A stretch of 64,000 bases of DNA from Ophelia neglecta. Its lineage: Eukaryota. A program made the position numbers and the translations under genes. Positions 2,844 to 61,469 of the stretch are shown here, piece by piece; position 1 is the first letter of the stretch, and the number at the start of each line of letters is the position of its first letter. The notes beneath the pieces were generated by a model. That model saw nothing but the letters and a program-made list of their open reading frames with translations. It ran no database searches and was not told the DNA's origin. The stretch covers positions 48,608,001 through 48,672,000 of the forward strand of contig OZ260664.1 in the NCBI GenBank assembly GCA_965285935.1. Reading direction: 5' to 3'.

Positions 2844-5800
2844 TACCGCGATATGTCTAATTCGCATGAAATAAATGTTATCTTCTGTTTTAGTTTGAAA
2901 GACCAGGAGCGTTAGACGAGCTGGACAATAAATATTAACGCGTATGAAAGTATATAGTGTGTGACTAATCATCCAACCTCAACTGTTACCCCCTCCCCCC
3001 CCCCTCCCCCAACACACACCCCTCCGTATTTGGAGTTTTAACGCATTTAAAGATTATACTACCACGTCATAGTGTTTCAATAAAAATATCATTTTTAATT
3101 GGTTGTATTTTTTACAGGTAAAATGTAAACAAATTTTTACTTAATCATTGTATAGTCCTTTTGGTAGTTCCCTTTGATGTTGTATTATACAAGTTCAGCA
3201 CGTTAGCTAAAATCACCGATATGGAAAGATAAATAACCTGGAAAGCCGCGGTATTTCACAATGTTTTGACGTAGGTACACATGGCTTTATTCGACATCTG
3301 TATATTTTGAGGGTTTTTCCAGTGGGATTTTAGAGAAATGGGGTGGCGGTTGGGCGGGAGGATGGGGCGGGGGGGGGGGGGTGTTAGTCTATTGGTTGTT
3401 TTAGGCCTATGTTTATATAATGCTGCATATTTTGTAGTCATACACGGGTCAAAGAGAAACTATTACAAAGCTTAAACCATGAATACATTGTCCGGGACTC
3501 GGGGAGGTATCAAAGGCACATGTGAAATTTCTATAAACACTTTTTTACAGTTTCTGATCTATGAGCCAATAACATTCTTTTTTTTCTTGCGCACATTAAA
3601 CGCCTTTGAAAATGACAAGACGTTAGAAGTTTGGTGTTCCATCAGAATACGCAGGTATACTACAACCATTTTCCTTGTCAACAGTAGTATTCCGGTATGC
3701 CTGTATAGATATGTCTCTTTCTGGTAAAGACAGTTCGCCCATAGTGACAATAAAGCTACTACTAGGGTTAAAGTTCCACTTACAAAGTACTTTTCCCACA
3801 ATAACACATGTCTGAATATATAAGTTTATCACATCACGCCTGTTAAATATGATAATTTGATCACTCCGGTTATGTCTGGCGGTTCTTAAAATGTGATGCC
3901 TTGATTAAGATTCACGATCATTATGCGCAGCTCTGAAGCAGGTGTCTCAAATGTAGATAGGCAATCTTCATTTGTTTCTCATTTTAAACTACAAAAATCC
4001 CACATCAAAAATGGTAATACATTACACTGAATTACTAAATTAGCTATATATATTTTTATAGCTGAGCCTGACTCACTGCGCTAAGGTAGAAGCTTGTTTG
4101 CAATGATTTGACAAACCAATAAGGGATTTGAATTAAAAAAAGGTCATTAACAGTTTATTTTTTGCAATGACAATTATTATACATAACATAAATATCAGAG
4201 CTGGCTCCTAGCTGACACCATAACATATATAAAGATCATTAAGCTTATTCTATTAAACATTAATCCCAAGGAGCCAACCAACAATTATTTACATAACAAT
4301 TTACTACTATAGTAAAGATAATTTTAAGAACTTAAAGGCAAACATTGCAAAGGTGGGGTGAACACCATCCACATATAAATAAATACATATAGATAGGGCC
4401 TATCTGTCCGGGATCCCTGTTCTCCCAGCTTGCTGCGGCTGTAGGATTCGATCTACTGAGCTAACCCCAAACCATTTTATATTCTAACATTATACTCCAT
4501 CGCAGTATTGTCGCTCTATAAACCATACAATCTCGGATGGGTTTGCTGGAAGTTCCCCAATTTTTGAGAACAACTAAAGATTTCCGACTTAAACATAAGC
4601 ACCAGCTGCCATGGATTCGCGCACAATAATCCATACCGGACGTCACCTATTAAGCCCTTTCAGACATAGCGAAAGTTTTAGGATTATTATAATGTATACC
4701 ATGGGTGTACTTATAAAGATGATGGCCATCAATAATGATCAATTCAAGTATGTACGTTAGAGTTAATGATTTGTTCTCGAAATCAATTGAAATTCGGAAG
4801 CACTGGGAAAACCTTTCGGTAAAACGAAACCGTTGATATTCACCTGAAAAACTAAGGGGATATAGTACTGGAGATGATTAGCAGTCTTAAGTTATATACA
4901 AGATTGTTTATTAAGACCAAGCCCAAACTAACTAAAAACTGCAATTTCATCCAAATTGTGAACTTTAAAAAGTTATCTCAAAGGGTTTAGGGATAAAACC
5001 AAAATACTCTTCTTGAAATAACTATATCAGCTTCCTTTCAAAATGGGCAGATAAACTTACGTTTGTCTCTACTTTTATATCAGCAGTATATTCAAATGCC
5101 CTATTTTAAGCCTTAATAGGTTATAAACTCTTCATCGTATTTAACGTCAAAATTTTAATTTGCCAAGAAGTACCTGATGTGTTCTTCTCATAATTTCAAG
5201 TTTATCTCACATATAACCTGCAAAATTGCTCGTGAGAGAAACATCTTCATAAAAATAAACTATTCAAATTAATGATAAGACTGGCAACAAGAATGATGAC
5301 TTGCTTAAAATTATTACGTGCTAACTAACTTTATTTAGTGCGTGAATTTTGTAAAGGTAAACTCGCCCATTGTATTCCTTATAATTGGCAGCTCTTCTGT
5401 ATGAAATATGTTTTCACAGCAGCTCGTTATGAAATTCGTCCGCCTTCTCGTTTACATACAATCGCATATCATTTATTCGTATGTCGTTGGAAATGCTGAA
5501 CACATCACTAGGATCACTACTATTGTTCTAAGCACACATACCTGCGGAAAATACTCTAGTTTATGGTTGTTTTCGGAAAAGACTAGAATTTTTTATTCAA
5601 TGAAAAATCGATGATTTCGAAAGATTTGCACTGTTAAAGGAACAATGATTTTGAGCTTCAGCGTCTCGTAAAACTAACGTTACTTCTGTAAGAATCGTGG
5701 AGTTTCAGTAGGGTATATCTTTCGTAACCAATCCTTGAAAGGGTTCTATCCATATCTATGACCTAGCCAGCTCATTTCAGCTGGCTTATTATTCTAACTA

Positions 5801-8800
5801 TAATTATCTCATATTGAACGATTATTGCATCGTTTTATTTTGTTAAATGCTGTGGAGGTATGTTGCACTTTCTGTGCTGTATAGTGCAACATACACAATA
5901 AAAAGAGCCTGTACTTTACATTATACAAGTCTGTGTTCAATCGACTGTTCTGTGTTAGCATGCAAGCTTACCCCGGCCACATGTGTTCTCATGTAAACGT
6001 ATTGAAATGGGCTCTTGTCCAATGACACCTCAGGGAGGAACGCACACTCTCAGATGAGATATGACATTGTTAGGGAAAAACTCTTGTTAGAAGAGTTTCT
6101 AGCTTTTGTCTATCCGCGAATGCTTAGAAATATCATCAATCGTTCAAAGCTTGTCAAAATAAAACTAAAAAATTCCGCTCTTTGATGTGATGAACAGTCG
6201 TGCCCCCATGTATTCCTATATAGCCTTAATGAGCAACATCCTCGAAATAAAAATTCATTGCTGATATTAATCAACTTGAAGGAAGTATGTTAACAATAAA
6301 GGGGATGGATATGAATCACTCCATTTATTAGGAATAAGAACTTGTGTTCTTGTTGAGTGAGGTTAATAGTGTCAGAAAGTGTAATTTCCGTTTTCAGCAA
6401 GACGATTTTCAAAGAGAAGGTACTATATCTTAGATCCACAGGAACGCCTTTTTTGTAAATTAGAATATTCTCTTCTGCATAATGTAGAGTGTTACAAGTG
6501 AAGTATATTCTTAATGTCCAATGAGTAATAGTTACCCACACTAAAATGCTAAACGACCGGGAAGGGATGACAGGGAGCGGAATATTATAGATGTTTATGA
6601 TTTAGAATAAGTCCGACGATGGGATCCATGTACGTAGTTAATTAGTCAGCAAAATTCTAATGATAATAATTCGCGTGACGTACACAAGGCGAGTTTGGAT
6701 TAGTTACTTCGAAAAAGGAAGCAATAACAAATGAAAAGCAAATCGACTTGACGGTACGAAACTTCCACCATATTTTAATGACCAGGTGGAGAAGATAACC
6801 TCGCTGAACTGAACATTGTTACCATGAGCGGATATAAGAAATCGGCAATTTATTATCTAGTTATGCTTTCCTCGAGTCACACGAACCAACCGATGTCCTG
6901 ATCAGCGTATGAACCTCAACATATCAAGAGGGAAGTCAGCTGAATCTTTTTTCTCTACATTTTTTGCCTTTAAGACTAGTTGCACCACTTATATCCATGG
7001 TGCATGATTACTTAAAATCAGACATTTGCGCGTTTCGGTGTGAGATATAGTGGGAAAATAATAAATTTCGCGTTTTAATGAAGGGTCTGTGCCGGCGGAT
7101 CAATGTACTTTCCGGCAGACAAAATCCCCTGATTGCGCCACTGATTAATGGCATGTTCTATTTTCAAGATTTTAAATCATCTATTTAAAGATTGAATGTG
7201 CAAACACAAAACAATATATATAAATATTTGCCCCAGTTAGGTGCTGCCATCTTCTGTGGCGGTTTCATTGTATTTAACCTTCGGGTAATTATAGCTGCAT
7301 TTATATTGGGAACCTTTTAGCCAAATTTGTTATATGCTGTAATGTTCACCCGCTTGACCAAAAGGCTGCAAATTTCTAGAAATTGCTTTCACTTCCCTTA
7401 TAGTCAAAACCTGCTAGGGAATGGACATGAGTATCTTGATCTTCCAGTCGGATGCGACCCGTGAACCCCTCGAAGCATGTGCTGCATAAATAAGCTCCTG
7501 CGTGGACAACATTTGCTGATTGCTATTTATCTCAAAAACCAACTCTTTATTTCCTAGTGTTCGATTTTCTGTTCATATCTTTAAACCGGTTAGGTGTACC
7601 AGAATTTTTTTTTTTTTTTTTTTATCAATATTGTTGCATTTGTTGAAGATTATTAAAAGCTGTCACTGAAAGTGCTGAAATCAGTTTAGATAAAGTCTAT
7701 CTGAAAGTATGTTCTTAAGTACATTATTCTTTATATGTTATGAAACCAACGATTTTGAACGATATCCTGCTAAATAGAATATGCTATATCCATTGTTTTA
7801 CCTAGCGCGCATACCTAACCTTTATTAGTCTCTAATATTATTGCAGTATTTAATTGTTTGCGGGCAGGATTAGTTATTCTAAAAATGTTAACTATGTAGT
7901 TTCCCTAACTCTCCTTATTAGGAGAGCGTGAAGTATGTAAAAAGTATCTTCTAAATATGCTGTAGTGTTTAAAACCGGGTTTCAGACAAAGCTGTTCGTT
8001 GATTCTTCCCTTCACCATTTCACCATATCTTGTACGTATGATATGTCAAAATGATACGAAGGGGTCCACTAACAGGCTTTAGTAAATTAATCCTATGGGA
8101 GAACTAGGGTTTTTTTTATCTTGTGGTGATAATTTGCAATGCAATTTAATTTAGGCAAATTAATAAATATCACGTTGCTACCCGCAAGGTAAATCTTATG
8201 ATTAAAATAAAAATGCAAAGTAGAAACTTATGCCTGGCATAGCCACCACCTGACGAAGTACGTTTATTATGGTGTCAGAGTTGGCAGTGGGCGTCCTTCA
8301 GGGCAAGGCTTGTGACGCAAAAAGTACATAAAAGTTGAAATGCTAAGGTAATAAACTGTAATGGGTTCCGGGTGGTGATAACTGTGGTAAATGGTCCTAA
8401 CTCGGCGGATGCCAGAGCTGTGAGTGGCAGACTGATATGGAGTCAGACACGGGTTAGGTGTTCCCGACTCATGTGGTGAGTACAAATTAAGGTGCTGCTT
8501 GTGGTGGTTTGACGAGGGATTCGGTGGGCTGGGATAGTGTCCTAGTGGGGTACTACATTGTTGTTGATTGTGCAATTTCATGTACAAGGCATTTGCGCTC
8601 AATTCCTGCGTGATTTTATTAAATTAATAGCATAGTTTTGCTGAGCTAAGAAAAAAAAACAAAGGACCGTGGTTAACTGTTTATTTTTTATCAATAACTA
8701 GGGCACATTCGGATAAAAAAGGAAAAGGCATTTTACGCTAAGGCCTTAACGCTAAATATACATTTTTCTTAGGTTAACAAAAATAAGAGGGACGCAAGTG

Positions 8801-9837
8801 TGAGATGATGGTAGAGGCCGTATAGGGCTATTGACACAACGAATGCGGGTCTATTGAGGCCTATACACTTAATCTTATTAGCGCATAGCAAGTTTCGTTA
8901 TAGGTCAATGTAAGGAGTTTTTGGCAAATAATAACAACAGAAATTACGAGGCCGGGGTGGGATGGTAATTTATCAGCCATTTTTCCATGTGAGTGTATCT
9001 TTCTTGCTGTATGGCGAAATGGGTCTCTGCACAAGCACAAAAAGGTATAACCTCAATCATACCCTACCCTATAGCTATCCAAGCAAACGCACCACAGTTC
9101 TTTGGCGTTTAAATAGGCCAAGAACGCGTTACGGGAATGCCACTGTTCAAGGAAAGCCACTGCCAATCTCTTATTAAGTGAAGTCAGGTCCAAAGTGATT
9201 TCTGATTTCTATCTCCAAACAGATTTTGTTGTTTTTGCTATTCTTCACGTGACGAATTTTTGGTTAATTCGAAATGTGTGACATGGTCTAGTATTTGACA
9301 TATGTGACAATCGTAGTGCGGCTGGATGGACTAAGCTTGAGCCCCATTCATGTTAAATGCGCGGAAACAAATTTAGAACTAGAACTGTTTAAACGGGACA
9401 TAGGCCCAAGGCATTGTTTTCGCTTGATATGTTTGAAAATATCAGTGGATTTGATATGAAGGCAGCGGACTATATAGGGTGAATGACGTAGCATACTCAA
9501 CATTGATTGTCACCTTTAAGTTTGCTTATCAACCGTGAGTGGTAACAGCCTTCCAAGCACTTACACCTCTCGGCCTTTTCCATGGGCACCTCTATGAGGT
9601 TGTAGAAAAATAAATTGTGCATGGGGTCTCACATTTATTGAGTGCGTCATAATTGTCACAGAAGCACTCTATGTGCTCAGATTTTCAACTGGCGACTCCA
9701 TAGTTTCAAGTGTCTAAAACACGTAATACGTAATACAATGACCGTTCTTACCTTTCTGTTAGACGTGCATTCATTTGAATACAGTTTCTCTTCGAAAAGG
9801 ACCTACCATTATAAACTGAATTTGCCCAATTTGAAAA

Positions 9838-9898
9838 ATGATTAGCCAATATTTAATATTGCTGCTGTCCACACTCACAATAACCGTGGCTGGTGGAG
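9838..9898 (+). CDS. CTLD gene exon 1 (signal peptide)
   Basis: AAAAATG start, MISQYLILLLSTLTITVAGG, consensus donor G|GTAAGT, phase 1. Confidence 0.75.
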
Positions 9899-12800
9899 GT
9901 AAGTAATTGGTCAGTTTTCTTCTTCATTATATAGGAATGCTTTCATCTTGAAAAGAACATTACAAACTTATATAGTACCTATATAATTCCTATATCGAAT
10001 TGCTAACTATAAATATCCAGGTAGAGCACCAGCGTTCTTGGACTTGTTACATTCACATCCTTGAATCAGGGCATTGAGCCACTCGGAATCATAATAAACT
10101 AGACGACACCTCGTCTTTATTCATTTCGATTTGTTACAAAGCCGTGATTAAACTTAATGGTAAAAACATTTAGGCCAGTTCGTCAAATACCTACTGCCCA
10201 GATATAACCTTTTACAAATAATATATATTGTGAGGGCAGTCTTATTATACCTGTTTAAAAATACAACAAGCCTATCATAAATATATAGCTATTTGCTAGC
10301 CAATACATTCATACTCATTTCGCAGCAACATGTCGATTATATGAGAATGATTCAAACGAAGTGTAAACATATAACCTCATGCCTGCAAATAGTGAACCTT
10401 CTATATAGTCGCTTAGTAAACTTACTGTTCACTGAGAGTGATGATATCCTCTTGAAATAAATCTACTAAAGTTAAACAATGATCACTATAACTATACATC
10501 TCGATAACTTTCTTTTGGGCATTCCATGTCCAGGTTCACTTTAGCCATTACTTTTACATTTTTCAGTTAAACAAATGTTTTAAGTAGTTAATTCTGTTTC
10601 TTTTTGGCTCTGTCTTTGCGTCATACTAATGCATCGTTGCAGGTAACAGTCACAAACTGAAGTCACAATAAAAGCGTATATGGTTCGTTTTAAGAGGTTT
10701 TATTGCAATGTTGGTGATAACAAAAACATGCCTCCATTTTTTACTACATGCCAGTCACTTATTTCCTGGTGCGAATCACACAAGGAAAACATGATCACTG
10801 AGTTCTTCTACTTGCACGAGATATTATATTGTAGTGATCAATGATGTTAATGTTTTTACGTTAAACTAACTAAAAGTTATGGGGCTGATTTTTATTTGAC
10901 TTCCGATAAATTGTATCTGATGAATTGGAATCGAATTTAATACACAATAGTTAATTACCGAATCTGGTTTGTCTGCAGAATATCCATTGCTGTTTTTTTA
11001 TCATTTGTATGTAGCCTGCGAACATTTCTTGTTCAAAGGAATAACTCCGCCCTTACAAGCCAGCAACTTACACGAGCGAAGTAATATCACTGACACGCAT
11101 AGTATGGGGATTTGGTGAAGTGTTTCGGATACAAGCTTCCTTTAGCTTTATTTTCATTTCCTTGACCATGGTTATTTGCCAAATTAGTGTCTCCCTGTTG
11201 CAAACAATCCTGACCCGTAACTTCTGTTATAACCATGCTATTGTTATGGTATTTTACGTCATGCATTGGTCACATTTAACTACTTTTCAGCTTTTGGAGT
11301 TTTGTTTTCGTCCTTCCTCTGTCGGTGTCAGTGAAAAACCCGCTGAAAATAATTGCCTTTTTGCTTGCATACTGTAATATGGTTTCAACTACGTTGGCCT
11401 GTGTATGCACTGTGGCTCACCTAGGCCAATGCCGACTTATCACACCAGTTATAAACTCAATTCATTGTGTACTTTGTAGCATACCAACCAGTAACTATAA
11501 TGATTACCTGCTTTATCACATCCTCTGTGTATCTGTACTTCATTCAAGTATCTTGCTTCTCATCATTACGATGATAATCTTATAATTTCTGATTGGCACC
11601 TTTATTAGAATCGTTCTGCCATCACAGACTACACCAGCCACCTCTAATTATTTGTTTTGTTGCCTCCCCCATCTTGTTGACTATAGCTTCTTTGGCAGAC
11701 TCTAACCACACACTTTAAATCCAGGGGATTGATGTATCTGGGCATGTGGGCCTGTGATCGCTGAATCATAATGATTTCTGGGAATTATAATGAGCTTTCC
11801 GTAATTAATGATTTGCTTGGTTACCGGGTTATCGACTCCGATTTTTAGTGGAAAGAAAAAACCTTCTTGCTTACTTTCTCATTTTGCTCTGCTCCAAGTC
11901 GCTTGGTCCTTACACTCTAGTCACTATTCACTGACCAAATACTTCCACAACTCAAAGTAAAAGTGAAAACTAACGCAGATCATTCATAGAATTGATTCGA
12001 ATTTTGCCCTGCCTACCAAGTATTTCTTGTAGTCGACGTGATCCTAAAATCAATTCGGTGCTTTCACTGCATTATAGCCTGCTTTTTTTTAGCTTCGAAA
12101 TGTCAACTTTAATCAATTCTAGTTAAATGGCCTGGCAGCCTTAATGTATTATGCAAACACCGATCAGTTTTCAAATAAAAATCAACACTGTCTAATTTCT
12201 ACTTAATTCACTAACCGAGTCTTCTCATAGAACGATCTTAATGGAACGGCATAGTGTCAATCTGCATTGCATTGTCAATACATCCACTTTATATTTATGC
12301 AAATGAAGTTTCGTCTAATCAAAGATGTACATATTCTTGTGCATTTTCCTACTGACATTTGAAAGTGTACACATTATGTTTTCAGTAAAATGGGATTTCA
12401 ATATAGTTTTTATATTAGCTAGGCTCCACCAATAAAAAAAAGCTAAATGTTTATCCATTCTGCCTTATTTCAGTTCAGAGTGTTTACAGCCTTTATTGTA
12501 TTTTTTTAGGATTCACTTCGACCTCGATCATTATGTACTACATAGTTTGGAGTGGGTGTTATAAACGGATTTACGTACATGTACGTCAATGTATTTAGAC
12601 CGCTACGTTACCAGACAACAATGGTCTCCAGGGCTACCGCCCCTCAGATCAGTAATAACGGTTAATGTAGTGTTCCTCGAGCATTATCTTATATGTTATC
12701 AGTTAAGGCTAGTGTCCGTATAGCGGTGGCACATTTTGTGGGCATACATGGGCAGAAATTCATCCTTTTAAAAGTGTTACTCAGACCATTTCTGCTTCAG

Positions 12801-14577
12801 CCTGTTGAAGTACCCCTATTCATAAGTAAACTATACAAAAAGGAACCCACAATGCCATTCAAACCTGCAGAAAATACTTGTGATATTTTTGCCTGAATCA
12901 TTTATGGATAAAGCAAAGTGAACATTTAATACGTTTTTCTACTTGTAACTATAAACCGCAAATCTTATATCAAAAAACCCTAATTTCGCCATCTTAACCC
13001 TTTTTCGTGGAGACAAAAAACACGTCAATTTGAAACCTTTCTCCTACGTTGCCCAGGTTCAACATGACGAAATGGTACTGCCTTGCCAAATTGATGATAT
13101 GAACAATTTTTCCGACAATTGTGCGATGGTTAAGGGTTACTTCACCAATATTCTCTATGTTCATGGTAATAAAATTAACTACTTATTATGATTGTGTTTT
13201 TTTCTTTCCTATTTCTGTTTACATTTTCGAGGATTGCGCTACCTTGAAATTATGCGGTAGAGCTATGAAAAATGAGAAGAAAAATGAATTCATAACAATA
13301 TTATACACACGTTCGTATGTTCTTATGCCCAGGTTTTTCAAACATTATACTTAATAACCAACAAAAACACTGTTTTACTGTACATCATATAGTCGGCCTC
13401 ACCTAATGGCATCTCTCATTTACCACTTACACGGTTATATGTTTTCACTTTTTACATTTGATTAAATTGACCGAGATAGAGGTGTTTGTTCCTGACCACC
13501 GAGGTGATATAATAGATATACTAGGAATCCAATTTGGCGTGAATCAACATGTCCTATAACCATTGACAATAAAGATACTAAACCAATAACTCGGGCAGAG
13601 CGAGTAGATATCTTAACGAGTATTGTTGTCCTTAAACAGGTCAGAGATGCTTTCAAAATTATCAAGAAAATACGTACACCTGTCTAGAGTATCTCAGTCA
13701 CGTGACATACACCTGGGAAGAAGGGGTGAAGGATTGCCACTCTCGTAGTGGCGAGCTGCTGTCGCAAGAAGAACGAGGCAGATACTTACACCGAATAGAA
13801 GCGGTCATTGACTCGAATCAGTGCGAGTTTTGGGTTGATGGTGAGTGATATATCGTTATCATATGTCTTATTGAAAAGGTCCTATCCCACTACATTTATT
13901 TACATGAAGGTACTGACAACACCTTTCTTTCAGGCTCAGAGGAGCAGAGAAGAATCAACTCATCTTGTTCCTATGCTCGTTGTCCTGATCTCACCTTGAC
14001 CATAAGTGACAATTGTGACATAAAAAAGCCAGTCGTTTGTCTACGTACTGAATATGACAGTGATTTTTTTCTGGAGTTCAGCAGTCATAGTTAGTATCCA
14101 ACTTTATTTCGAAACTCGGGTATAGTGTGCTTCCATAAGGTGCCGTAGATCCTGTTATTTTATTATTATGGCGAACTATCTTAAGGCGCCATCTTTGGGA
14201 CCGAAAGTAAAATTAGGCATATTACTGTTAGTCAGTAGAGGTGGCAAATTGCCAATCAATGAACCAGCTTAGCACTCATGTTTCCCTAAAATAGAACAAA
14301 TTGAATCTGATCATAATTTGCACAGTTATTGAACCTTCATTAATGAGGCAAAGCATGCGTGCTTCGAATATAAACACCAAGAAAAGTCATGATTTAAAAA
14401 TATAAAAAAAGTTTATTAATGCTGTGTTTTATCTTTGCAGAGGGACCAGTAATTACCTTGCTGGTCATTTTATCAACCTTCACTATAGTACTGACGATCT
14501 TTGTCGCTCGAAAATGGGTTCAAAAAGTTAACAACCGACAGCGGGTTGCCCCGTTGTATATTCCTGTGCCAAACTGA
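9838..14577 (+). CDS. Four-exon gene for a 169-aa single-pass membrane C-type-lectin-like protein: join(9838..9898,13640..13840,13934..14044,14441..14577)
   Basis: All three introns are GT-AG and phase 1; the 510 bp frame is open. Protein: MISQYLILLLSTLTITVAGGGQRCFQNYQENTYTCLEYLSHVTYTWEEGVKDCHSRSGELLSQEERGRYLHRIEAVIDSNQCEFWVDGSEEQRRINSSCSYARCPDLTLTISDNCDIKKPVVCLQGPVITLLVILSTFTIVLTIFVARKWVQKVNNRQRVAPLYIPVPN*. CTLD hallmarks: C-x10-C, TWEE.V..C....G.L, FWVDG (WIGL-like), C...D.C..KKP.VC. Confidence 0.85.
13640..13840 (+). CDS. CTLD gene exon 2 (N-half of lectin domain)
   Basis: Acceptor CCTTAAACAG|, donor G|GTGAGT, 201 bp, phase 1-1; QRCF..TCL..TYTWEEGVKDCHSRSGELL..CEFWVD. Confidence 0.87.
13934..14044 (+). 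CDS. CTLD gene exon 3 (C-half of lectin domain)
   Basis: Acceptor CTTTCTTTCAG|, donor C|GTACTG, 111 bp, phase 1-1; ..SSCSYARCPD..SDNCDIKKPVVCL. Confidence 0.85.
14441..14577 (+). CDS. CTLD gene exon 4 (TM helix and short cytoplasmic tail)
   Basis: Acceptor TTTTATCTTTGCAG|; VITLLVILSTFTIVLTIFVA followed by RK stop-transfer residues; TGA at 14575-14577. Confidence 0.85.
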
Positions 14578-15175: not shown

Positions 15176-15951
15176 AAATACCTTTCTTCGCATAATCGTT
15201 ATATATCCGACTTTCGGCGATTTATGTTGAACCGGCCGAAAGCCAGACGATGCTCGTATGCTCATCGTACAACTGCGAAATAAAGAACGATCTATATACA
15301 TACAGGCATGATTGACCGTGATGATTCAATTAAGTTGAATTTCAAAGTCAACAAATAATCAGGTTCATGGATAGTCCTTGACAAATGGTCAAGTTAAAGT
15401 TATGTGAAGCAGTTAGTTTTGTGTTCGTAAAGTATCAAAATCAATGTTTGTAGGTCATGGACCGATATACATCTAACGATTCCTGTTAAGGCTTGGACGC
15501 AATCTGATAACGCCTTTAACTTCATGCTTAGAAATTACTCAAGTAATATGTATTTAGTTGAGTTGACCTTGAAGATGAAGACTTAATACTAATTGAATTT
15601 CATTAAAAGATGCACTCCTAACGACCTCGTGTGATTTCATAGGCATTCCAAATTCATTTTTAGTACGATTAAGACACCAGGAGATGTCATAGTTAAATGA
15701 TATTATTTTGGTGTGATCTACAAACATTTGTATAAGACATAATTGAAAATTTCATTGGTTCAGTTACACAATTTAGGCGCAACAGTCTAGATTTGTAACA
15801 TGTGTAGCATGTTCTTTATTCTTATATCAAAACATTCTCTTAACATGTAATTGCATCTTGTAGTATAATTCCAAAAATCAAAGTTATGGCAGCATTTATT
15901 TATACAGAACAATGAGGTGCTCTGGTATTTGCTCTATACAATTGCCCTATT

Positions 15952-15988
15952 CCCCCTCCCCCTCCCCCTCCCCCCCCCCCCCTCCCCC
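15952..15988. repeat. (CCCCCT)n / poly-C tract
   Basis: Directly visible; similar C/G tracts at about 2988-3010, 3364-3382, 18324-18339, 35041-35052 and 36424-36436. Confidence 0.85.
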
Positions 15989-16399
15989 GTAACCATAATT
16001 ACAGTAACCTAATCACTCGTAAAGTTTGAACTATGCTGAAAACATGTCTTCCTCATCGTTCTTTTTAGTTTTATATTCTCACTCTTGTAAACAGGAAACA
16101 ATGCATATCCATTATTTACAATTTCCTATTAGGTTTACCAAGGACTATATATGGGAGTCCTTCCTTATTGGTTGTCATAACGAAAAAGAAAGGGAAAAAC
16201 TTCGGTCAGTTTTGTGAATGTGTATATGCGCAAGAAACAGCTCCTACCACATAATTTTCGTTTTTAAATATCACCTATCTAATCTACCGTTATCATAAAA
16301 CAGTTCATTGTGAGAACTGATGGGTTTCATAAAACTCCTCTAACACCCTTCATATGGCATCTTCGCGAATGCCACGACCCAGAGCCCGGTTATGGGGCA

Positions 16400-29511: not shown

Positions 29512-30545
29512 TCAGGATTCGTCCTCACTTTCTGAGATGGAACTTCCGGTGTCATCATTGCGCAGGTCGTCGACAGATGCCAGATTTTTAATTTTTTTCC
29601 TATGTCCTGTCCCTCGACCTTGTTCTTCGTCCTCGTCCTCGTCCGATGACGAGTCCGACAAGGGATCAGTCACTATTTGATATTGGTAGGTATAGTCAAG
29701 ATCGTTTTCAGGGATTTTTGCAGTTTCATCATCGCTTGAATCCCTCTCTTCAGAAAAGTCAGAGAAATCGCCGTAGTCGATGGGCTTCATACACACGGTG
29801 CATAGGTTGTTGATATCGGTGAAGCAGTCCTGACAATAAGTGGCTTTGCAGCCAGTATTTGCGCAGTTCACAAACGATTCTTTGTCGGCTTTCTCTGCGA
29901 TTTTTCCACATGCCAGGCAATGAGTCATCTTGTGGCCGAAGAGCCGCAAAACTTTTGCTGCGAACTTTGATCTTGCTGCTAAACGGTGTGTCAGGCAGAT
30001 TTCGTCTTTCTTCTGTTGAATTTCGTGGTCTTTTCTCATTTGTCGACGGAGATGCTTTAAGAACCCTCCTCTCCTACAGAGAATGTGATTATAAAGCCAA
30101 ACCGCCCGCTGTTTCTCTCTCTCGGGGTAAAACCAAGAACACACCACGTGACGGAGTCGCAGCCCGTAGTTCTGAACTAACACCAATACAAAACATGTCC
30201 CAAAAATAGCACCAATCGTCTTGTACATGAAGTAATTGGGGACGCTTGGGTTTGGCAAACAGGGGGCGGTGTCCAGACTCAACTGTTTTCTTGTTTGAGG
30301 ATCGAATTGATTGATTAATGTTCTATAAATGTCTGCCAGAATTCCATCACCCTGTACATGAATTTTAATTGCGGAGGGCAAGCTTTCGTTTATGTCCACT
30401 CGTCCATGGTGACGAATCATACTCATCAACCAATACAGACCGTAGTCACAGACTATGTAAAAAGCGGCATGCAAAAACGTGGCCATGAAAAGGACAACTC
30501 CTGTGATGAGCTTCCTTCGCTCACTCTTGGCTAACCTGATAGAAT
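29512..30545 (-). CDS. DCST2: DCST2 exon 7 (DC-STAMP domain, Cys8 RING-like domain, acidic tail)
   Basis: CTGCTTCACAG|AT SIRLAKSERRK..; lies within the 354-aa track ORF; stop at 29512. Confidence 0.92.
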
Positions 30546-33500
30546 CTGTGAAGCAGAAAAAAATCCCAATTACCATTATACCACTCCACGATGCACAAAT
30601 AAGTAGTTTGAATTTTAGATGTCAAGTGGAAAAAAATCCTTAAATAATACTGTGTACTTCGAAGACTTATCACGCTGGCCAAGCTTTATCAACATTGCAT
30701 TATGTGAGCTTTCTAAGCAATTGGGCCACTTGAGTGACCATGTTGAGAGTAATCGGTAAGGCGTGTACTCGTTTTGATATACCGGCCGTCTTCTTTCCAG
30801 TTCAGCGGCAGGATGGTTTCCTTTTCCCGCTCATGTCTTTTTTCATCGATATCGTTGATGTGATCAGTGATATAATGATTGTCAAAGCCGTCTTTTGTGA
30901 GGTATTTACGTCGGTAGAGAACAGCCCTGTAAAATAGGATTCCAACGTGTGTTTCACTACAAAACTACCCATTGGCTATATATACTTGATTATTAAATCG
31001 TTCATTTCTTGAAAACTTTGTTCATTAATCTGCCGATATTATAAAGCTCTGGTCATGATTAAAATTTCTTAAGTGTCTAAAGTTAATTCTTGCCACAAAA
31101 CTGTGTTATTTGTTTTCTTGGGTACCGGTCGGTTGTCATTATTGAAATGTCCGAGCACATTTCTATAGGTTATGGCTGTTTTATGATGAGGTTATGGCAT
31201 ACGGACTGGCTGGCTATTTGTAAAAGACCAAGCTGAGGAAATGTGTCATGCACGATTCTTTAGAAGCGAGACCATTTTGCTTTTACAAATATTTGCATGT
31301 CTATAAATCCGTGCACACGAATCTACTTCACGAACGATGGTGTAACGACGCCAAACCCTTTAAAATTGACTACCTGACAGAGGGACATCTTAAAATTTCC
31401 AAACGATGTCCTATAATGATTGGCTTCCATGTACACCTGCTTAAGACATATTGTGGTTTTGTACGTTCAACCGATTGTCGTCTGGAAAGTGGACCATTAA
31501 TTCAAATACTCCTTCGTAGCTTAATATACTCCATAAGACTTACAAGTATTAGAAACTAGTTACGCTTTGTGACAGCGCTTCAATATTTTTTGCCATGGAT
31601 TTCGTTTAATGCTGATTTTAAAACGTAATTTCTCTCGAATTAGCTATATTAGATCTGTATATTTTACTATTAGGCTTATGCTTGCCCCTTAATACCAATG
31701 TTTTCTCGTTGAAAATGGTGTGCACATTCACTCTGTTAATCAGTTTAACCCTTTTTATGCGTAATAACAGATTTTTCACCGAGTAAGCCAGATAAAAAAA
31801 GATAGCAATAAAAAATACTCGCGCTCGCATCAGTTCTACGAAAGTCTAACTGTACCAGAAACTAAAATCTTCTTATTAAGTGTTTGTTTTTTGCCTTACG
31901 CATGGTGACAAGTTGTCCCGGGGATATAAGAACTTTTTACTGAAGATAATATGCTTGATTTAACTCGAATGGATGAACACTTTAGCATCCTCTGGATAAC
32001 AAAAGGGAAACACCGTATGCCTTGGGGCCGCCTTAATCCGATTAAAAAATGGTATTAAATTGCTTAATCGGTATTAGCTAGTTAAGTTAGTTTTTGTAAA
32101 GTGTATTAGGTATTAAATATTGGTGATTTGGTATTAGATCTTAATCCTGGTCTGAAGGTGGATTAAGTTCCCTAATACCGATTAAGAATCAAACATCAAG
32201 ATGGCAGCGAATGGCAGACGCCACCATCGCCGGCGACTTTCTACAGTGGGTAAAGAACTTTTTTCCTAATTCTCAGCGTGTGTGTCCTCAATCCACATGT
32301 GTAATGACTGATAGTGGTAGGTAGCTCGTCAAATGGTAGATCCATTTGTTTATCATTAAGTTAAATGTCGAGGGAATCGGTGGTGAAGTTAATTTACAAC
32401 AGAAAGGGACAAATAACTATTATAGTATATCAAAGAGTATAAAACACAGCCCTGATAGAACATTCGGTTCCCCCCGCATCTTGTTTTTGATTTTTGTTGT
32501 TACTCCCATGCTGTGAGGTCCTTCCAGAGTTGACCGTCTTTCAACATAGGCCCTGACGAGGACCTCCTCCTCCCGTGCACTCTAATTTTTGGAGCGTGAA
32601 CTGGGCTCGGACTCGTCGTCTGCTGGAGAGTAGGGATCCATTTTGCTTTTCTCGGGGTCTCTGACAACAGGGTGACGCATGCGCGTAGGTAGTAAATAGC
32701 GGAAAGGCCCCTCCATATGTGTATTTGCAGTTTGGTCGCGCCTTTCGATTTAATCCAATTGAGTATTTGCTAATAGGAATAACTAATCGGGCCTTAAAAC
32801 CGCTTCCAGAAACCTAGATTAACGATGGTATCAGCTAATCGGTAATAGCTTGATCCAATACCGAAAGTTAATACCGCTACCAGAAACCGGCCCCTGGAAG
32901 TGTATTGGAGAGTTTTAATATGCAGGTCCTGGCCATTAATTGTAGATCGCGAAAACCTTGCTTATCATGGCTGAACTCTTTTAGAGGCACTTACAACCAG
33001 TTCTGCCATGGATAATAAAGTTTACAAAAGGAAAAAATCCGTGAAATAGAATTGGAGGCTTTAACAAGGGCTGCTGATTTTCGGTCATTTCAAAGCAGAC
33101 AAAAAGAGTGAGCAGACTGAAGAAAAAAAAGGTTACCATATCAGTGACAAATATGCAAGTGCTGGGCTTCTAAATTAAAGCTCTTGATAATGTTTGAAAA
33201 CGCATATTTTCTTTACCATTGTATAATTTCCGGCACGAAAGAATGCGAATGTATAAATATCAATAATACCACGTGACATGACGTATATACATCTAATAAA
33301 ATTATTTGCCGAACGGCTATTCATTAAAAAATAATTACCATTAGTTTGGATTATTTTCAGATTCTCTGAAAAATATTATGATTAGTTGCATCTTCATAAC
33401 GAGGGACAAGAGAGTCGCAAGCGAAGTATACATCAATAGTTTAAACAGTGGAAGGGCCTCGCTTAAAATGTGTGCTGCTGTATCTCTTCGACGCTAGGCC

Positions 33501-43960: not shown

Positions 43961-44103
43961 NNNNNNNNNNNNNNNNNNNNNNNNNNNNNNNNNNNNNNNN
44001 NNNNNNNNNNNNNNNNNNNNNNNNNNNNNNNNNNNNNNNNNNNNNNNNNNNNNNNNNNNNNNNNNNNNNNNNNNNNNNNNNNNNNNNNNNNNNNNNNNNN
44101 NNN
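43961..44103. other. Assembly gap (143 N)
   Basis: Run of N. Confidence 1.
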
Positions 44104-54199: not shown

Positions 54200-56930
54200 A
54201 TTGACGCTGAATAGGAACCGGTGGTCATACAAACATTTCCTATCATCGCTCATGTGCGCAGGAGATATTGAACTAATCCAAGGCCCTGGTGTTTCAGGAT
54301 TGCTTTTGTGTAATGAACGTCCTTGCCATGACCAGCCCACAGTAAATTGGTTGGACGTTCAGCAACCGGAGGCCCTTGTTCAGCTGATTTCTGCTGCAGC
54401 CGAGGACAACTTTGAGGTCTTCAAAGAGAAAGGTTTGTACTTCCTACATCTTTATGCTAGAATCATTATTAATATAATTGAGGACCGTAAATCTGTTTGA
54501 ATTGATCTACTTCTGCCAAAAACTAAACCCATTTTAGTGGGTACTATTTATAAGCCACCTAAGGACAACACTTTTTATGAAAATCTTGAATTGTCTTTGG
54601 TGAGCTCAGATTCTTATATCAAGCAAGAGACTGCCATAATGGGTGACTTTAACACAAATGTTTCTGGTGTGTCATTGAAAGCTTTATGTGGGAATTCGAG
54701 AGATTTTATGAATTGTTTTGACTTTAAATTATTCAAATTATAAATGAACCAACAAGGGTAACTCCTTCTACTAGCAGTATAATTGATCTCATTATTGTGT
54801 CTGATGACTCCAAGGTGGCTCATCACGGTGTAATCACATATGGTTTGAGTGACCACTATTTAACTTATTGCACACGCAAAGTAACACGCGGGCAGGGAAC
54901 CAAGCATAATACAGTGCCCATAAGGTCCATGAAGAATCATACTATAGATTATTTTGTAGAGGTTTTAAATAACATCTCTTGGGGCAGTGTTTTAAATGAC
55001 CAGTGTATAAATAATGCAAGGTACCTGTTACCTGGGTACTCATGTCTGTTGTAGATAAGATCGCACCAGTTGAACAGGTCCGACTGAAGCAAAGATCAAA
55101 GCCATGGTTCAGTGGTGAAATTTTCGATGCAATCCAAATAAGGGACTTGGCTCTCAATAAGTTCAGAAAAAGTGGGCTTACAGAATGGTATGGCAGATAT
55201 AAAGAGGTTAGAAATTTTGCTCAGAGGCAGGTTAGGAAAGCCAAACAAATGTATATAGCTGATCAGATAGAAGCAAAGTGTCATGACTCTAAAAAACTTA
55301 GGAAGTGTATTAAGATGATTGGTTTGCCCAGCAATAAGTCTAGTGGCTCCACAAATATAGGTCTCAAATCTGACTGTGGAGATGAAATTGTGTTTGTTAA
55401 ACAACAGGTTGCAAACCGTTTTGACACATATGTTTTTTAGTATAGCAGAGAAACTTGCCTACTCTTGGTCATGGTGTTTTCTCTGACTATAGTGATTTTC
55501 TTCGAACTACTATAGGAATGTAAATCATATACAGTGAAACCTGTGAATTAAGACCACCCAGTGGACCTGAAAAATGCTGGTCTGATTTTGGAGGTGGTTG
55601 GTTTAGACAGGTTATTTAACATTGAAAGTATACAGCATGGTCCTTACTTTAGTGGTCTGGATTGACAGGTGGTCTGATTATAGAGGTGGTCTTTAAGGAA
55701 GTTTCCACTGTACAGTGACACCTGTGAATTGAGATCACCCAAGGGACTGGAAAATGCTGATCTGATTTTGGAGGTGGTTACTTTAGACAGGTTATTTAAC
55801 ATTGAAAGTATACAGCATGGTCCTTACTTTAGTGGTCTGAATTGACTGGTGGTCTGATTATAGAGGGGGTCTTTAAGGCAGTTTCCACTGTAGATTAATT
55901 TACTCTATGTATAGTGGATGAGAATGTTGTTCTCAATCAGCTCAGCTTGTTGAATGCTGGCAAATCAACTGGTTTGGATGGTATACCTGCGAGGTTTTTA
56001 AAGGAGGGTGCTCCTGCTATTTTAAAACCGGTAGCTTTTATATTTAATATTTCATTGAACACTTGTATAGTTCCTGACAATTTCAAACAGGCAAGAGTAG
56101 TGCCATTGTATAAAAAAATATACAAAAAAATATAACATCGCATCATTGAGCATTTCATGTGATGTAATCCTCATAAACTGAAAAAAAAAACGGTTCGGTA
56201 TTTGGGAGCTGCCCTGGAACAAACTATCAGTGGTGAAGTGATGGGAAAACATGCAGTTAAAAAGGTAAACTCCAAAATAAAATTCTTTTATAGGATTTCT
56301 AGGTTTATTCCATGTGGCGTTCGAAAATTATTGTGCATGTCACTTCTTCAGTCACATTTTGACTATGGTGCTAAATTTTTGGTGTTTTTGGTTTGACGAA
56401 GTACACTAAAGATAGAATGCAGGGGGCTCTGATCAAAATTGTTAGATTCATATCTAACCTTGAATATAGGGCACATTTTGGTAATCCTCTTTTTTTTAAG
56501 GATCTATCTATTTTGCCAATATCTCTAAGAAGTCACTATATGACATGTGTTCTGATGTATTTATGCTTAAATAATATGGCTCCGAAATAAATGAATAATT
56601 TTGTGAGAGTTAGAGATGTTCATAACCATTGAACTAGAGGTAGGCTGTTTAAAGTGGGATTGCCTAAGGCTCATGGGAATGTTGGAAGAGGTGCCTTTAT
56701 GTATTAGGGTGCTATGACTTGGAACAATCTTTCCAGCCATGTAAGTTCAGCTGTTAATATTGAAACTTTTAAGTGTACAAGTGAAGCTTATTTTCTTGGC
56801 CTGTTGACCTAATAATTGACACAGGTTTGTTGTATGGCGATGGTAGTGTATTATGTTTATTATGTAGGTGCTTAATATGGTTTTGGTAGAATTGATACAT
56901 GCATACCCCTGGGACCACCATAAGAATTGA
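54200..56930 (+). mobile_element. Decayed L2/Crack-type LINE (2A-like motif, APE endonuclease, RT with internal deletion)
   Basis: KGLYFLHL, ILVGTIYKPP, IMGDFN, INEPTRVT..IDL, GLSDH; GKSTGLDGIPARFLK..P..FK.ARVVPLYKK; jumps to YLGA.L..(RT domain 7), so the RT core is missing; multiple frameshifts and stops. Confidence 0.9.
55532..55890. mobile_element. Head-to-tail MITE dimer (55532-55710 and 55713-55890) nested in the LINE
   Basis: TA-CAGTG..CACTG-TA-CAGTG..CACTG-TA; both units are homologous to 28918-29092. Confidence 0.92.
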
Positions 56931-60900: not shown

Positions 60901-61469
60901 AGTTTCATGCAAAGTGACAAGCCCCCTTTATACTTCTTTTTTGTCCTTTGGATTAGGGTCCAGTTTTTACATTCGTCTCGTGGTGTAATAAGAAGCACGT
61001 TCTTAAATAAAGTATTTCTCATTTCATTTAACTCTATGTCATTATTTGATGTTAGATGAACAGCAGTTTCGATGAAGTCTTTTTGAGTTTTATTCAACAA
61101 TGTCGGTGCATATTTATTCCATACATTGTTAGTTTGATTGGGACTGGCAGCTTCGGCTAGATAAGGTCCATTTGAGGTCACCTGGCTGTTAGCGTCTGGA
61201 GAATGCAGAGCGTAACTCTGATTGTCGCTCTGACGTGACGGTACTTCCATAACCTGGGAGTAAAATTCATTGTTCTCACAAAGTGTCAGTGCAAGCCGTA
61301 CCTCATTGGCAAGTACATGTATGTCCATAATTGTTTCACGGTTGACTTCACTGTCTCGCCCGTGAAGCACGGCGACGAGGATGTTTCAGCCCCCACGAAC
61401 AGCTGAAGCTGGCTTTCCCAGCTTTCGTCGGCTGGCAAAGAGAACAAAGCAGAGTAATGCACAGCCTCA
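57909..61469 (-). mobile_element. RTE/RTEX-like LINE, 5'-truncated, internally deleted and frameshifted
   Basis: ORF1-like remnant (60822-61469); APE end YTF..SIIDHI..SDHLP; LKNGKAGG.D; QNAYQ; YLDA..AFDSVW; RQGSIL; MHADD; YLG-like HLG; C..C...HIL.EC; 3' AATAAA and (TA)n near 57909-57923. Confidence 0.9.
58203..58230. repeat. (TGAT)n microsatellite inside the LINE ORF
   Basis: TGATTGATTGATTGATTGATTGATGATT. Confidence 0.9.

What the first reader, a model, noticed from the sequence alone, without database searches (positions are those of the whole stretch)
9838..14577. Hidden 169-aa stalkless membrane receptor with a compact 8-cysteine C-type-lectin-like domain
Seen: four short exons, none in the ORF track, splice in phase 1 into signal peptide + CTLD + TM + ~24-aa tail. 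Only about 10 residues separate the WIGL-like motif (FWVDG) from the next Cys, so the long loop is essentially absent. EPN/QPD and WND motifs are missing. Two extra Cys (NQC, ARC) occur beyond the six canonical long-form Cys. The domain ends 3 residues before the TM, and the tail carries YIPV (YxxPhi). Knowledge: Ca2+/sugar binding in CTLDs uses the long loop and EPN/QPD+WND; compact CTLDs bind other ligands. Inference: a Ca-independent, protein-binding, possibly endocytic surface receptor with a fourth disulfide, perhaps from an undescribed lineage-specific family.
Basis: partly seen in the sequence, partly recalled or inferred. Interest (0 to 1): 0.78.

Follow-up and report, generated by a model that had tools for sequence, protein, structure and literature searches.

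The report
Small receptor with shortened lectin domain
This invertebrate genome carries an unannotated single-copy gene for a small surface membrane protein whose outer part is a shortened C-type-lectin fold lacking the usual sugar- and calcium-binding loop. A second, distant species keeps the same gene exon for exon, so it is real, but what it does is unknown.

Summary
The four-exon, phase-1 model is in the sequence as described, and all splice sites are GT/AG. It is more than chance. A contig from another organism (L002, no DNA similarity) carries collinear homologues of all four exons. They share 36-43% protein identity, the same intron phases and the same eight cysteines with nearly identical spacing. 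They also share an invariant IFVARKW after the membrane span and a YxP[V/L] motif in the tail. Exon 2 matches the N-terminal half of solved C-type lectin-like domains (NKR-P1A, E 3e-4). A profile of this genome's own canonical lectin domains aligns up to the WIGL position and again from Cys2 to Cys4. About 13 residues stand where about 37 long-loop positions would be. EPN, QPD and WND are absent.

One correction. The window keeps the frame open to an in-phase donor at 14089. The protein is therefore more likely 184 aa with a short linker, not "stalkless".

The gene is single-copy here, and one relative was found among 1.8 billion cluster representatives of about 15 billion proteins. Verdict: a real gene and a new compact variant of the lectin-like fold. 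The ligand and the endocytic role are inferred only.

The parts
9838..9898 (+). Exon 1: ATG plus a 20-residue hydrophobic signal-peptide-like segment. Donor GAG|GTAAGT, phase 1.
   Evidence: It is the only ATG-started, phase-1, hydrophobic, good-donor candidate in 5000-13639. The orthologous contig has exactly one such exon too (L002 651-717).
9899..13639 (+). Intron 1 (3.7 kb).
   Evidence: No ORF here is similar to the model or to L002. Polymorphism and indels in genomic contigs are dense here.
13640..13840 (+). Exon 2 (201 nt): N-terminal half of the lectin-like domain. It holds the Cys hairpin pair (C24, C35), TWEEG...C53 (helix 1), the extra C82 and FWVD(G) at the WIGL position.
   Evidence: - Searches give the sequence and translation.
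- PDB CTLD hits.
- Atlas Lectin_C clusters.
- P0001 orthologous exon, E 6e-13.
- 41% identity with all 4 Cys invariant.
- The one coding SNP seen, 13689 G>A, is synonymous.
13841..13933 (+). Intron 2 (93 nt). It is too short to hide an exon that could supply a long loop.
   Evidence: There is a stop in frame after 2 codons. Its position and phase are conserved in L002 (2316-2561).
13934..14089 (+). Exon 3: C-terminal half of the domain (C99, C104, C115, C123; pattern C-4-C-10-C-7-C) plus a probable 15-residue juxtamembrane linker. In-phase alternatives lie at 14059 and 14089, and 14089 is preferred.
   Evidence: -.
- L002 exon 3 (2562-2714) has the same Cys spacing and ends after FFSH.
- tblastn E 1e-4.
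- The local CTLD profile aligns Cys2, Cys3 and Cys4 here.
14441..14577 (+). Exon 4: membrane span, invariant IFVARKW, basic tail with R[VI]AP and YIPV, then stop TGA at 14575-14577.
   Evidence: -.
- 43% identity to L002 3058-3206.
- SNP 14542 C>A is synonymous.
- Single copy in the genome.

Best explanation
**What it is**
This is a real, single-copy, evolutionarily conserved gene that gene callers missed because its four exons are short. It encodes a small type I membrane protein.

**Layout**
- A signal peptide.
- One compact domain of the C-type lectin-like superfamily in the 'long form', meaning it has an N-terminal Cys hairpin.
- A short linker and one membrane span.
- A conserved IFVARKW stop-transfer segment.
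- A tail of about 24 residues with a conserved Y-x-P-[VL] motif.

**The domain**
It keeps the fold-defining features: Cys1 to Cys4, the W of WxxA-like TWEEG, and the W of WIGL. It has lost almost the whole long loop region and with it the EPN/QPD and WND calcium/sugar site. It has gained two conserved Cys (C82 and C104) that probably form a fourth disulfide holding the shortened top of the domain.

**Inferred mechanism (not shown)**
The domain binds a non-sugar ligand, probably a protein, without calcium. The tail tyrosine motif sorts the receptor through clathrin adaptors.
For: **Gene model**
- It is open, with GT/AG borders and phase 1 throughout.
- Each locus has a unique signal-exon candidate.

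**Conservation**
- L002 carries all four exons in the same order, strand and phase.
- Identity is 41%, 36% and 43% for exons 2, 3 and 4.
- There is no other similarity between the 12-kb contig and the 64-kb window.
- pS is 0.85, which is saturated, against pN 0.41.
- Cys spacing is identical apart from the residual loop.
- Both coding polymorphisms seen are synonymous.

**CTLD homology**
- PDB NKR-P1A at E 0.0045 rising to 2.9e-4 with the profile, followed by DEC-205, mannose receptor and IgY receptor CTLDs.
- P0004, a protein with three Lectin_C domains, at E 2.5e-4 library-wide.
- Lectin_C is the only Pfam family for L002 exon 2, at E 0.059.
- Atlas Lectin_C clusters score 0.94.
- The own-genome CTLD profile gives 21.6 bits (window) and 12.7 bits (L002), while the best of 500 shuffles reach 8.5 and 10.5. 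It aligns profile positions 7-57 and 94-120 and skips the long loop.

**Single copy**
-.
Against: - No transcript evidence exists. The only public runs holding the locus are genomic.
- Pfam Lectin_C is below its cut-off on every exon.
- The joined protein was not scanned or folded.
- The only fold attempt, on exon 2 alone, was low-confidence with pLDDT 50.6.
- Disulfide pairing, ligand, calcium independence and endocytosis are all inferred.
- The choice among the donors at 14044, 14059 and 14089 rests on a generic donor matrix recalled from memory and on a single orthologue.
- The organism behind L002 is unknown.
Confidence: 0.72

Rival explanations
1. It is the same gene, but the reader's exact 169-aa stalkless form is the main product. 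Exon 3 would end at 14044, and the last Cys would sit 3 residues from the membrane span.
For: The junction 14044/14441 is in phase and GT/AG. The linker is the least conserved part between the two species.
Against: The donor TAC|GTACTG scores -5.8 bits, against -0.9 for 14089 and -1.2 for 14059. The orthologue cannot make a stalkless form. Its only good in-phase donor lies 19 residues after the last Cys, behind FFSH, which matches window FSSH.
Confidence: 0.2
2. The protein is not a ligand-binding endocytic receptor. It is a small auxiliary or chaperone subunit of a membrane complex such as a channel or receptor. The conserved membrane span and IFVARKW would make the contact, and the compact lectin-like domain would act as a structural cap.
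For: The membrane/juxtamembrane exon is as conserved as the ectodomain, at 43% with seven invariant consecutive residues. The gene is single-copy, unlike the expanded recognition-receptor families.
Against: No partner is known. A conserved stop-transfer segment is also seen in ordinary receptors. The tail keeps a YxxPhi-type motif in both species.
Confidence: 0.2
3. It is a Link-module-like glycosaminoglycan receptor, a protostome counterpart of CD44/LYVE-1. The architecture would match: signal peptide, compact CTLD, short stalk, membrane span, tail.
For: The domain is compact. It has a Cys three residues before the conserved W, as Link modules have (own knowledge, not tested here). The overall architecture is similar.
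Against: There is no Xlink (PF00193) signal on any exon at E up to 10, and none in the whole genome. PDB hits are canonical CTLDs, and no Link protein appears at E up to 1. The N-terminal Cys hairpin is a long-form CTLD feature. Link domains are reported from vertebrates only (PMC9630629).
Confidence: 0.07
4. The domain is not a lectin-like domain at all. It would be an unrelated small cysteine-rich fold whose first half resembles CTLDs by chance.
For: All CTLD scores are modest. Pfam is below threshold. Exon 3 alone finds nothing in PDB. Two bacterial repeat proteins also passed E 1e-3 in the big search.
Against: Independent searches all converge on CTLDs, with the landmark residues in register: Cys0, Cys0', W, Cys1 and the WIGL W. 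The C-terminal Cys2, Cys3 and Cys4 also align with canonical spacing. No shuffle out of 500 reaches the observed score.
Confidence: 0.08

Closest known systems
Long-form canonical C-type lectin-like domains (Pfam Lectin_C PF00059), e.g. NK-receptor CTLDs such as NKR-P1A
   Same: - An N-terminal Cys hairpin.
- TW-E-x-x-x-C in helix 1.
- A W at the WIGL position.
- Cys2, Cys3 and Cys4 with canonical spacing, including 7 residues between Cys3 and Cys4.
- These are the best sequence hits in PDB.
   Different: - About 24 fewer residues lie between the WIGL strand and Cys2.
- There is no EPN/QPD or WND.
- Two extra conserved Cys are present.
- The topology is type I rather than type II.
- Every exon scores below the Pfam cut-off.
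Compact CTLDs: Link/PTR modules (CD44, LYVE-1, TSG-6)
   Same: The long loop region is absent and the domain size is similar. The CD44-like layout is a single compact domain, short stalk, membrane span and short tail. The compact class is described in PMC9630629 and PMC7673688.
   Different: - There is no Xlink profile signal.
- It has four disulfides rather than two.
- It keeps the long-form N-terminal hairpin.
- It occurs in an invertebrate, whereas Link domains are reported as vertebrate-only.
- This would be an independent loss of the loop.
CD302 / layilin-type receptors (type I, one CTLD, short tail)
   Same: The architecture is a signal peptide, a single CTLD, a short spacer, a membrane span and a short cytoplasmic tail with sorting motifs.
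   Different: CD302 has a canonical CTLD with a long loop region (PMC7673688). No sequence relationship beyond the superfamily was detected.

Membership tests
C-type lectin-like domain superfamily (Pfam Lectin_C, PF00059) | Profile match at or above the curated cut-off (22.6 bits) | tested here: not met
   Exon by exon only. The window exons give no hit at E up to 10. L002 exon 2 gives 14.5 bits, E 0.059, on profile positions 2-44. The joined protein was not scanned.
C-type lectin-like domain superfamily (Pfam Lectin_C, PF00059) | Significant sequence similarity to solved or annotated CTLDs | tested here: met
   - NKR-P1A at E 2.9e-4 with the two-species profile, and other CTLDs next.
- P0004 (three Lectin_C domains) at E 2.5e-4 in 1.84 billion proteins.
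- The own-genome CTLD profile gives 21.6 bits (window) and 12.7 bits (L002), and 0 of 500 shuffles reach either score.
C-type lectin-like domain superfamily (Pfam Lectin_C, PF00059) | Four core cysteines (Cys1 in helix 1 with Cys4 in the last strand; Cys2 with Cys3) and the long-form pair Cys0-Cys0' | tested here: met
   Positions align as follows: C24 and C35 with Cys0 and Cys0', C53 with Cys1, and C99, C115 and C123 with Cys2, Cys3 and Cys4. All are conserved in L002. The pairing itself is not testable here.
C-type lectin-like domain superfamily (Pfam Lectin_C, PF00059) | WIGL hydrophobic-core motif | tested here: met
   FWVDG (window) and FWING (L002) align with the WIGL strand of NKR-P1 and of the own-genome CTLDs. 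Only the W and the following aliphatic residue are kept.
Canonical (sugar-binding) C-type lectins | Long loop region with EPN/QPD and WND calcium/sugar site | tested here: not met
   None of the motifs is present in either species. 13 residues (window) or 9 (L002) lie between the W and Cys2, where the profile has about 37 positions. Intron 2 is 93 nt, so no hidden exon can supply the loop.
C-type lectin-like domain superfamily (Pfam Lectin_C, PF00059) | CTLD three-dimensional fold | tested here: inconclusive
   Only exon 2 could be folded by reference. It gave pLDDT 50.6 with secondary structure strand-strand-helix-helix, which is compatible but not usable. The joined model was not folded.
Link module (Pfam Xlink, PF00193) | Profile match to Xlink | tested here: not met
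   There is no hit on any exon at E up to 10 and no Xlink match anywhere in the genome (the tool's control genomes did not ring either). No Link protein appears among PDB hits at E up to 1.
Endocytic receptors with tyrosine-based sorting signal | YxxPhi motif in the cytoplasmic tail, functional in AP-2 binding | not testable with these tools
   The motif is present and positionally conserved, as YIPV in the window and YSPL in L002. Its function is untested.

The most novel reading that the evidence does not exclude
The gene founds an old, so far unannotated protostome family. In it, a long-form C-type lectin-like domain lost its long loop independently of the vertebrate Link module and replaced it with an extra disulfide. 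That would make an invertebrate 'CD44-style' compact-lectin receptor with its own, non-sugar or glycosaminoglycan-type ligand.
Probability: 0.15. Interest if true: 0.65.

Novelty: new variant of a known kind. Interest (0 to 1): 0.4.

Why it matters
Reviews divide lectin-like domains into canonical ones, which have the long loop, and compact ones. The compact class comprises vertebrate Link modules and bacterial intimin/invasin domains. A conserved animal membrane protein whose long-form domain has lost the loop outside vertebrates would be a second, independent route to a compact domain. It would also be a minimal scaffold for asking what the core fold can bind without the loop.

The case also shows that short-exon genes of this kind escape annotation. 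No full-length protein of this family was found among the 1.8 billion cluster representatives (of about 15 billion proteins) that were searched.

The practical importance is modest until expression and a ligand are shown.

Tried and rejected
**RNA support**
- The run search returned only three genomic-type runs from one sample. Laying them showed continuous coverage of the introns and no joints. The junctions therefore remain untested.

**More relatives, all blank beyond P0001/L002**
- Word-based protein searches with exon 2, with the exon-2 alignment and with the exon-4 alignment.
- Locus scans of viral contigs, metagenome contigs (twice) and prokaryote genome contigs.
- Own-genome searches with exon 2, exon 4 and the exon-2 profile, which found only the locus itself.

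**Searches that gave nothing or could not be trusted**
- Exon 3 alone, and as a two-species profile, finds nothing in PDB.
- P0002 and P0003 from the big search are bacterial repeat proteins matched by many short stretches. I rejected them as spurious.
- The AlphaFold model of exon 2 alone was too poor to send to a fold search, so no fold search was run.
- dN/dS proper cannot be computed because synonymous sites are saturated.
- TATA and poly(A) hexamers near the gene are uninformative in this AT-rich DNA.

It was built only inside scripts, for counting, local alignment and a local profile comparison.
Full report
**1. The observation**

The window is AT-rich eukaryotic DNA with 36-41% G+C. It comes from a 762-Mb, 223-contig genome at C7:48608001-48672000. 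Earlier notes of this scan call it an invertebrate, probably a mollusc or annelid (untested by me).

| Exon | Coordinates | Border or end |
|---|---|---|
| 1 | 9838-9898 | donor GAG\|GTAAGT |
| 2 | 13640-13840 | donor ATG\|GTGAGT |
| 3 | 13934-14044 | donor TAC\|GTACTG |
| 4 | 14441-14577 | TGA stop |

- All acceptors are pyrimidine tract plus AG, and all junctions are in phase 1.
- The total is 510 nt, which is 169 aa.
- Kyte-Doolittle windows give an N-terminal hydrophobic segment at residues 1-20 and a membrane span at about 126-148. The span is followed by ARKW and a basic tail.
- Cys lie at 24, 35, 53, 82, 99, 104, 115 and 123.
- EPN, QPD and WND are absent. There is one N-x-S sequon (NSS, residue 96), and YIPV is in the tail.

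**2. Is it more than chance?**

Yes.

- A full HMMER search of 1.84 billion cluster representatives with exon 2 found P0001 at E 6e-13 and 42% identity. P0001 is a 74-aa ORF fragment.
- It lies on a 26-kb contig of an ENA metagenome assembly, fetched as L002.
- L002 has homologues of exons 2, 3 and 4 in the same order and strand.
- Read by eye, L002 gives a complete four-exon gene of 194 aa, with every junction in phase 1 and introns at the same aligned places. Its exons are 651-717, 2100-2315, 2562-2714 and 3058-3206.
- Protein identity is 41%, 36% and 43% for exons 2, 3 and 4.
- The eight Cys are all kept. Successive distances are 11, 18, 29, then 17 in the window against 13 in L002, then 5, 11 and 8.
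- tblastx between L002 and the whole window finds only these three exons, and blastn finds nothing.
- Synonymous sites are saturated at pS 0.85, while pN is 0.41. The two genes are therefore anciently diverged and under purifying selection.
- In each locus, a scan for ATG-started, phase-1, hydrophobic exons with a positive donor score upstream of exon 2 returns exactly one candidate.
- The public runs that hold the locus are genomic. They cover the introns continuously and show no joints. The two coding differences they show are both synonymous: 13689 GAG>GAA and 14542 CGG>AGG.
- No RNA run exists for this organism in the index, so no junction has been seen in RNA.

**3. One correction: the end of exon 3**

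It scores -5.8 bits on a generic metazoan donor matrix. The matrix frequencies are recalled from memory.
- The frame stays open for 15 more codons, to ATA|GTTAGT at 14089 (-0.9 bits), and a TAG follows at 14092-14094.
- A third in-phase donor lies at 14059 (-1.2 bits).
- In L002 there is no in-phase donor near the last Cys. Exon 3 runs on for 19 residues and ends ...FFSH|GTGCGT (+2.8 bits). That matches window ...FSSH|GTTAGT.
- The likelier product is therefore 184 aa, with a linker of about 16 residues between the last Cys and the membrane exon.
- 'Stalkless' is a doubtful detail, and only RNA can settle it.

**4. What the domain is**

Evidence for the N-terminal half (exon 2):
- Exon 2 alone hits solved NK-receptor CTLDs, with NKR-P1A at E 0.0045. 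Almost the entire list is CTLDs: CD72, DEC-205 and the PLA2R-like IgY receptor.
- As a two-species profile, the E-value improves to 2.9e-4.
- The alignments put C24 and C35 on the long-form hairpin cysteines. They put TWEEG...C53 on the W and Cys1 of helix 1, and FW on the WIGL strand.
- The library-wide search also returned P0004, a protein with three Lectin_C domains, at E 2.5e-4.
- Lectin_C is the only Pfam family seen for L002 exon 2. At 14.5 bits it is sub-threshold, and it covers profile positions 2-44.
- The window exons give no Pfam hit.
- The protein-language-model atlas places exon 2 among Lectin_C clusters at 0.94. It places exon 3 weakly among C-type-lectin fragments at 0.90, below the recognition bar.

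Evidence for the whole domain:
- I looked at the whole domain without sending a joined sequence to any search tool. I built a local profile from seven single-exon canonical CTLDs of this same genome plus one domain of P0004.
- The joined ectodomains exist only in the script's scratch folder. They score 21.6 bits (window) and 12.7 bits (L002). The best of 500 shuffles reach 8.5 and 10.5.
- The alignment covers profile positions 7-57, up to the WIGL W. It then covers 94-120, with Cys2 = C99, Cys3 = C115 and Cys4 = C123.
- The roughly 37 profile positions between them, the long loop region, face only about 13 residues.
- Intron 2 is 93 nt in the window, so no hidden exon can supply a loop.
- The residual loop is the only length-variable part, at 10 against 6 residues after the Gly. 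It carries the single N-glycosylation sequon in both species, NSS in the window and NGT in L002. That fits an exposed turn.

Conclusion on the domain:
- It is a member of the CTLD superfamily by sequence, of the long form, and has become compact.
- The two non-canonical cysteines (C82, three residues before the W, and C104, five after Cys2) are conserved. They presumably pair, but I could not test this.
- The only fold obtainable by reference was exon 2 alone. It gave pLDDT 50.6 with strand-strand-helix-helix. That is compatible but too poor for a fold search.

**5. Not a Link module by sequence**

- No exon gives an Xlink signal.
- The genome has no Xlink match.
- No Link protein is among the PDB hits.
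- The literature I could read divides CTLDs into canonical ones and compact ones (Link/PTR and bacterial). It states that Link domains are vertebrate-only and arose by deletion of the loop (PMC9630629; PMC7673688 gives CD44 as the compact example and CD302 as canonical).
- I found no paper describing an invertebrate long-form compact CTLD receptor. That is a limited search, not proof of absence.

**6. How it most likely works**

Shown:
- The gene structure, its conservation and the superfamily relationship.
- The loss of the loop and of the calcium/sugar motifs.
- The conserved extra Cys.
- The conserved IFVARKW at the cytosolic face.
- The conserved R[VI]AP...Y-x-P-[VL] in the tail.

Inferred:
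- The protein is inserted type I, from the signal peptide and the positive-inside tail.
- The domain cannot bind sugar through the classical Ca2+ site 2, so it binds something else, most likely a protein, as NK-type and other loop-less CTLDs do.
- The tyrosine motif is a YxxPhi sorting or endocytosis signal.

The equal conservation of the membrane/juxtamembrane exon leaves room for a rival. The protein could be an accessory subunit of a membrane complex.

Single-copy status contrasts with the hundreds of canonical CTLD candidates in this genome (581 first-look candidates). This argues for a housekeeping or developmental role rather than a diversified immune-recognition role.

**7. Novelty and score**

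- The fold family is known, so this is a new variant of it: invertebrate, long-form, loop-less, with four disulfides and type I topology.
- It has only one relative in very large databases.
- There is no expression or functional evidence.
- Interest is moderate, at 0.4.

**8. Step left out**

The joined sequence was not given to Pfam, PDB, homology, atlas or structure tools.

Noticed in passing
window 29512-30576 (-), with further exons up to about 38580 (-): A DC-STAMP-like gene lies 15 kb downstream on the opposite strand. Its 354-aa terminal ORF hits Pfam DC_STAMP at E 6.6e-46 and ends in a Cys-rich, RING-like tail followed by an acidic Ser/Asp/Glu-rich end.
   Followed up: partly
window 58511-61370 (-) and 55042-55440 (+): These are remnants of a non-LTR retroelement. 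One ORF hits reverse transcriptase RVT_1 at E 3e-7, and neighbouring ORFs have no Pfam hit.
   Followed up: no
window 15947-15990: A C-rich simple repeat of the form (CCCCT)n runs into a poly-C tract about 1.4 kb downstream of the gene.
   Followed up: no
window 43961-44103: A run of 143 N, either an assembly gap or a masked stretch. It was left untouched.
   Followed up: no
window 9899-13639 (intron 1), e.g. 10350-10356: The genomic contigs of the three public runs differ from the window at many intron-1 sites, with SNPs, small indels and a 24-letter replacement at 10350-10356. Exons 2-4 and their short introns differ at only 3 sites in 984 bases in one contig. This indicates a heterozygous or polymorphic sample with a quieter coding part.
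   Followed up: partly
G000 genome-wide (loci L006-L035): Many canonical Lectin_C matches in this genome begin at profile position 35-41. This suggests a common intron just before the WIGL strand, whereas a subset on C1 and C12 encodes the whole domain in one exon. In the gene studied here, the intron lies just after the WIGL-like FWVDG.
   Followed up: no
L002 4446-5084 (-): The orthologue-bearing contig carries a MULE-type transposase ORF 1.2 kb downstream of the gene. The organism of this ENA metagenome contig (ERZ25069296) is unknown.
   Followed up: no
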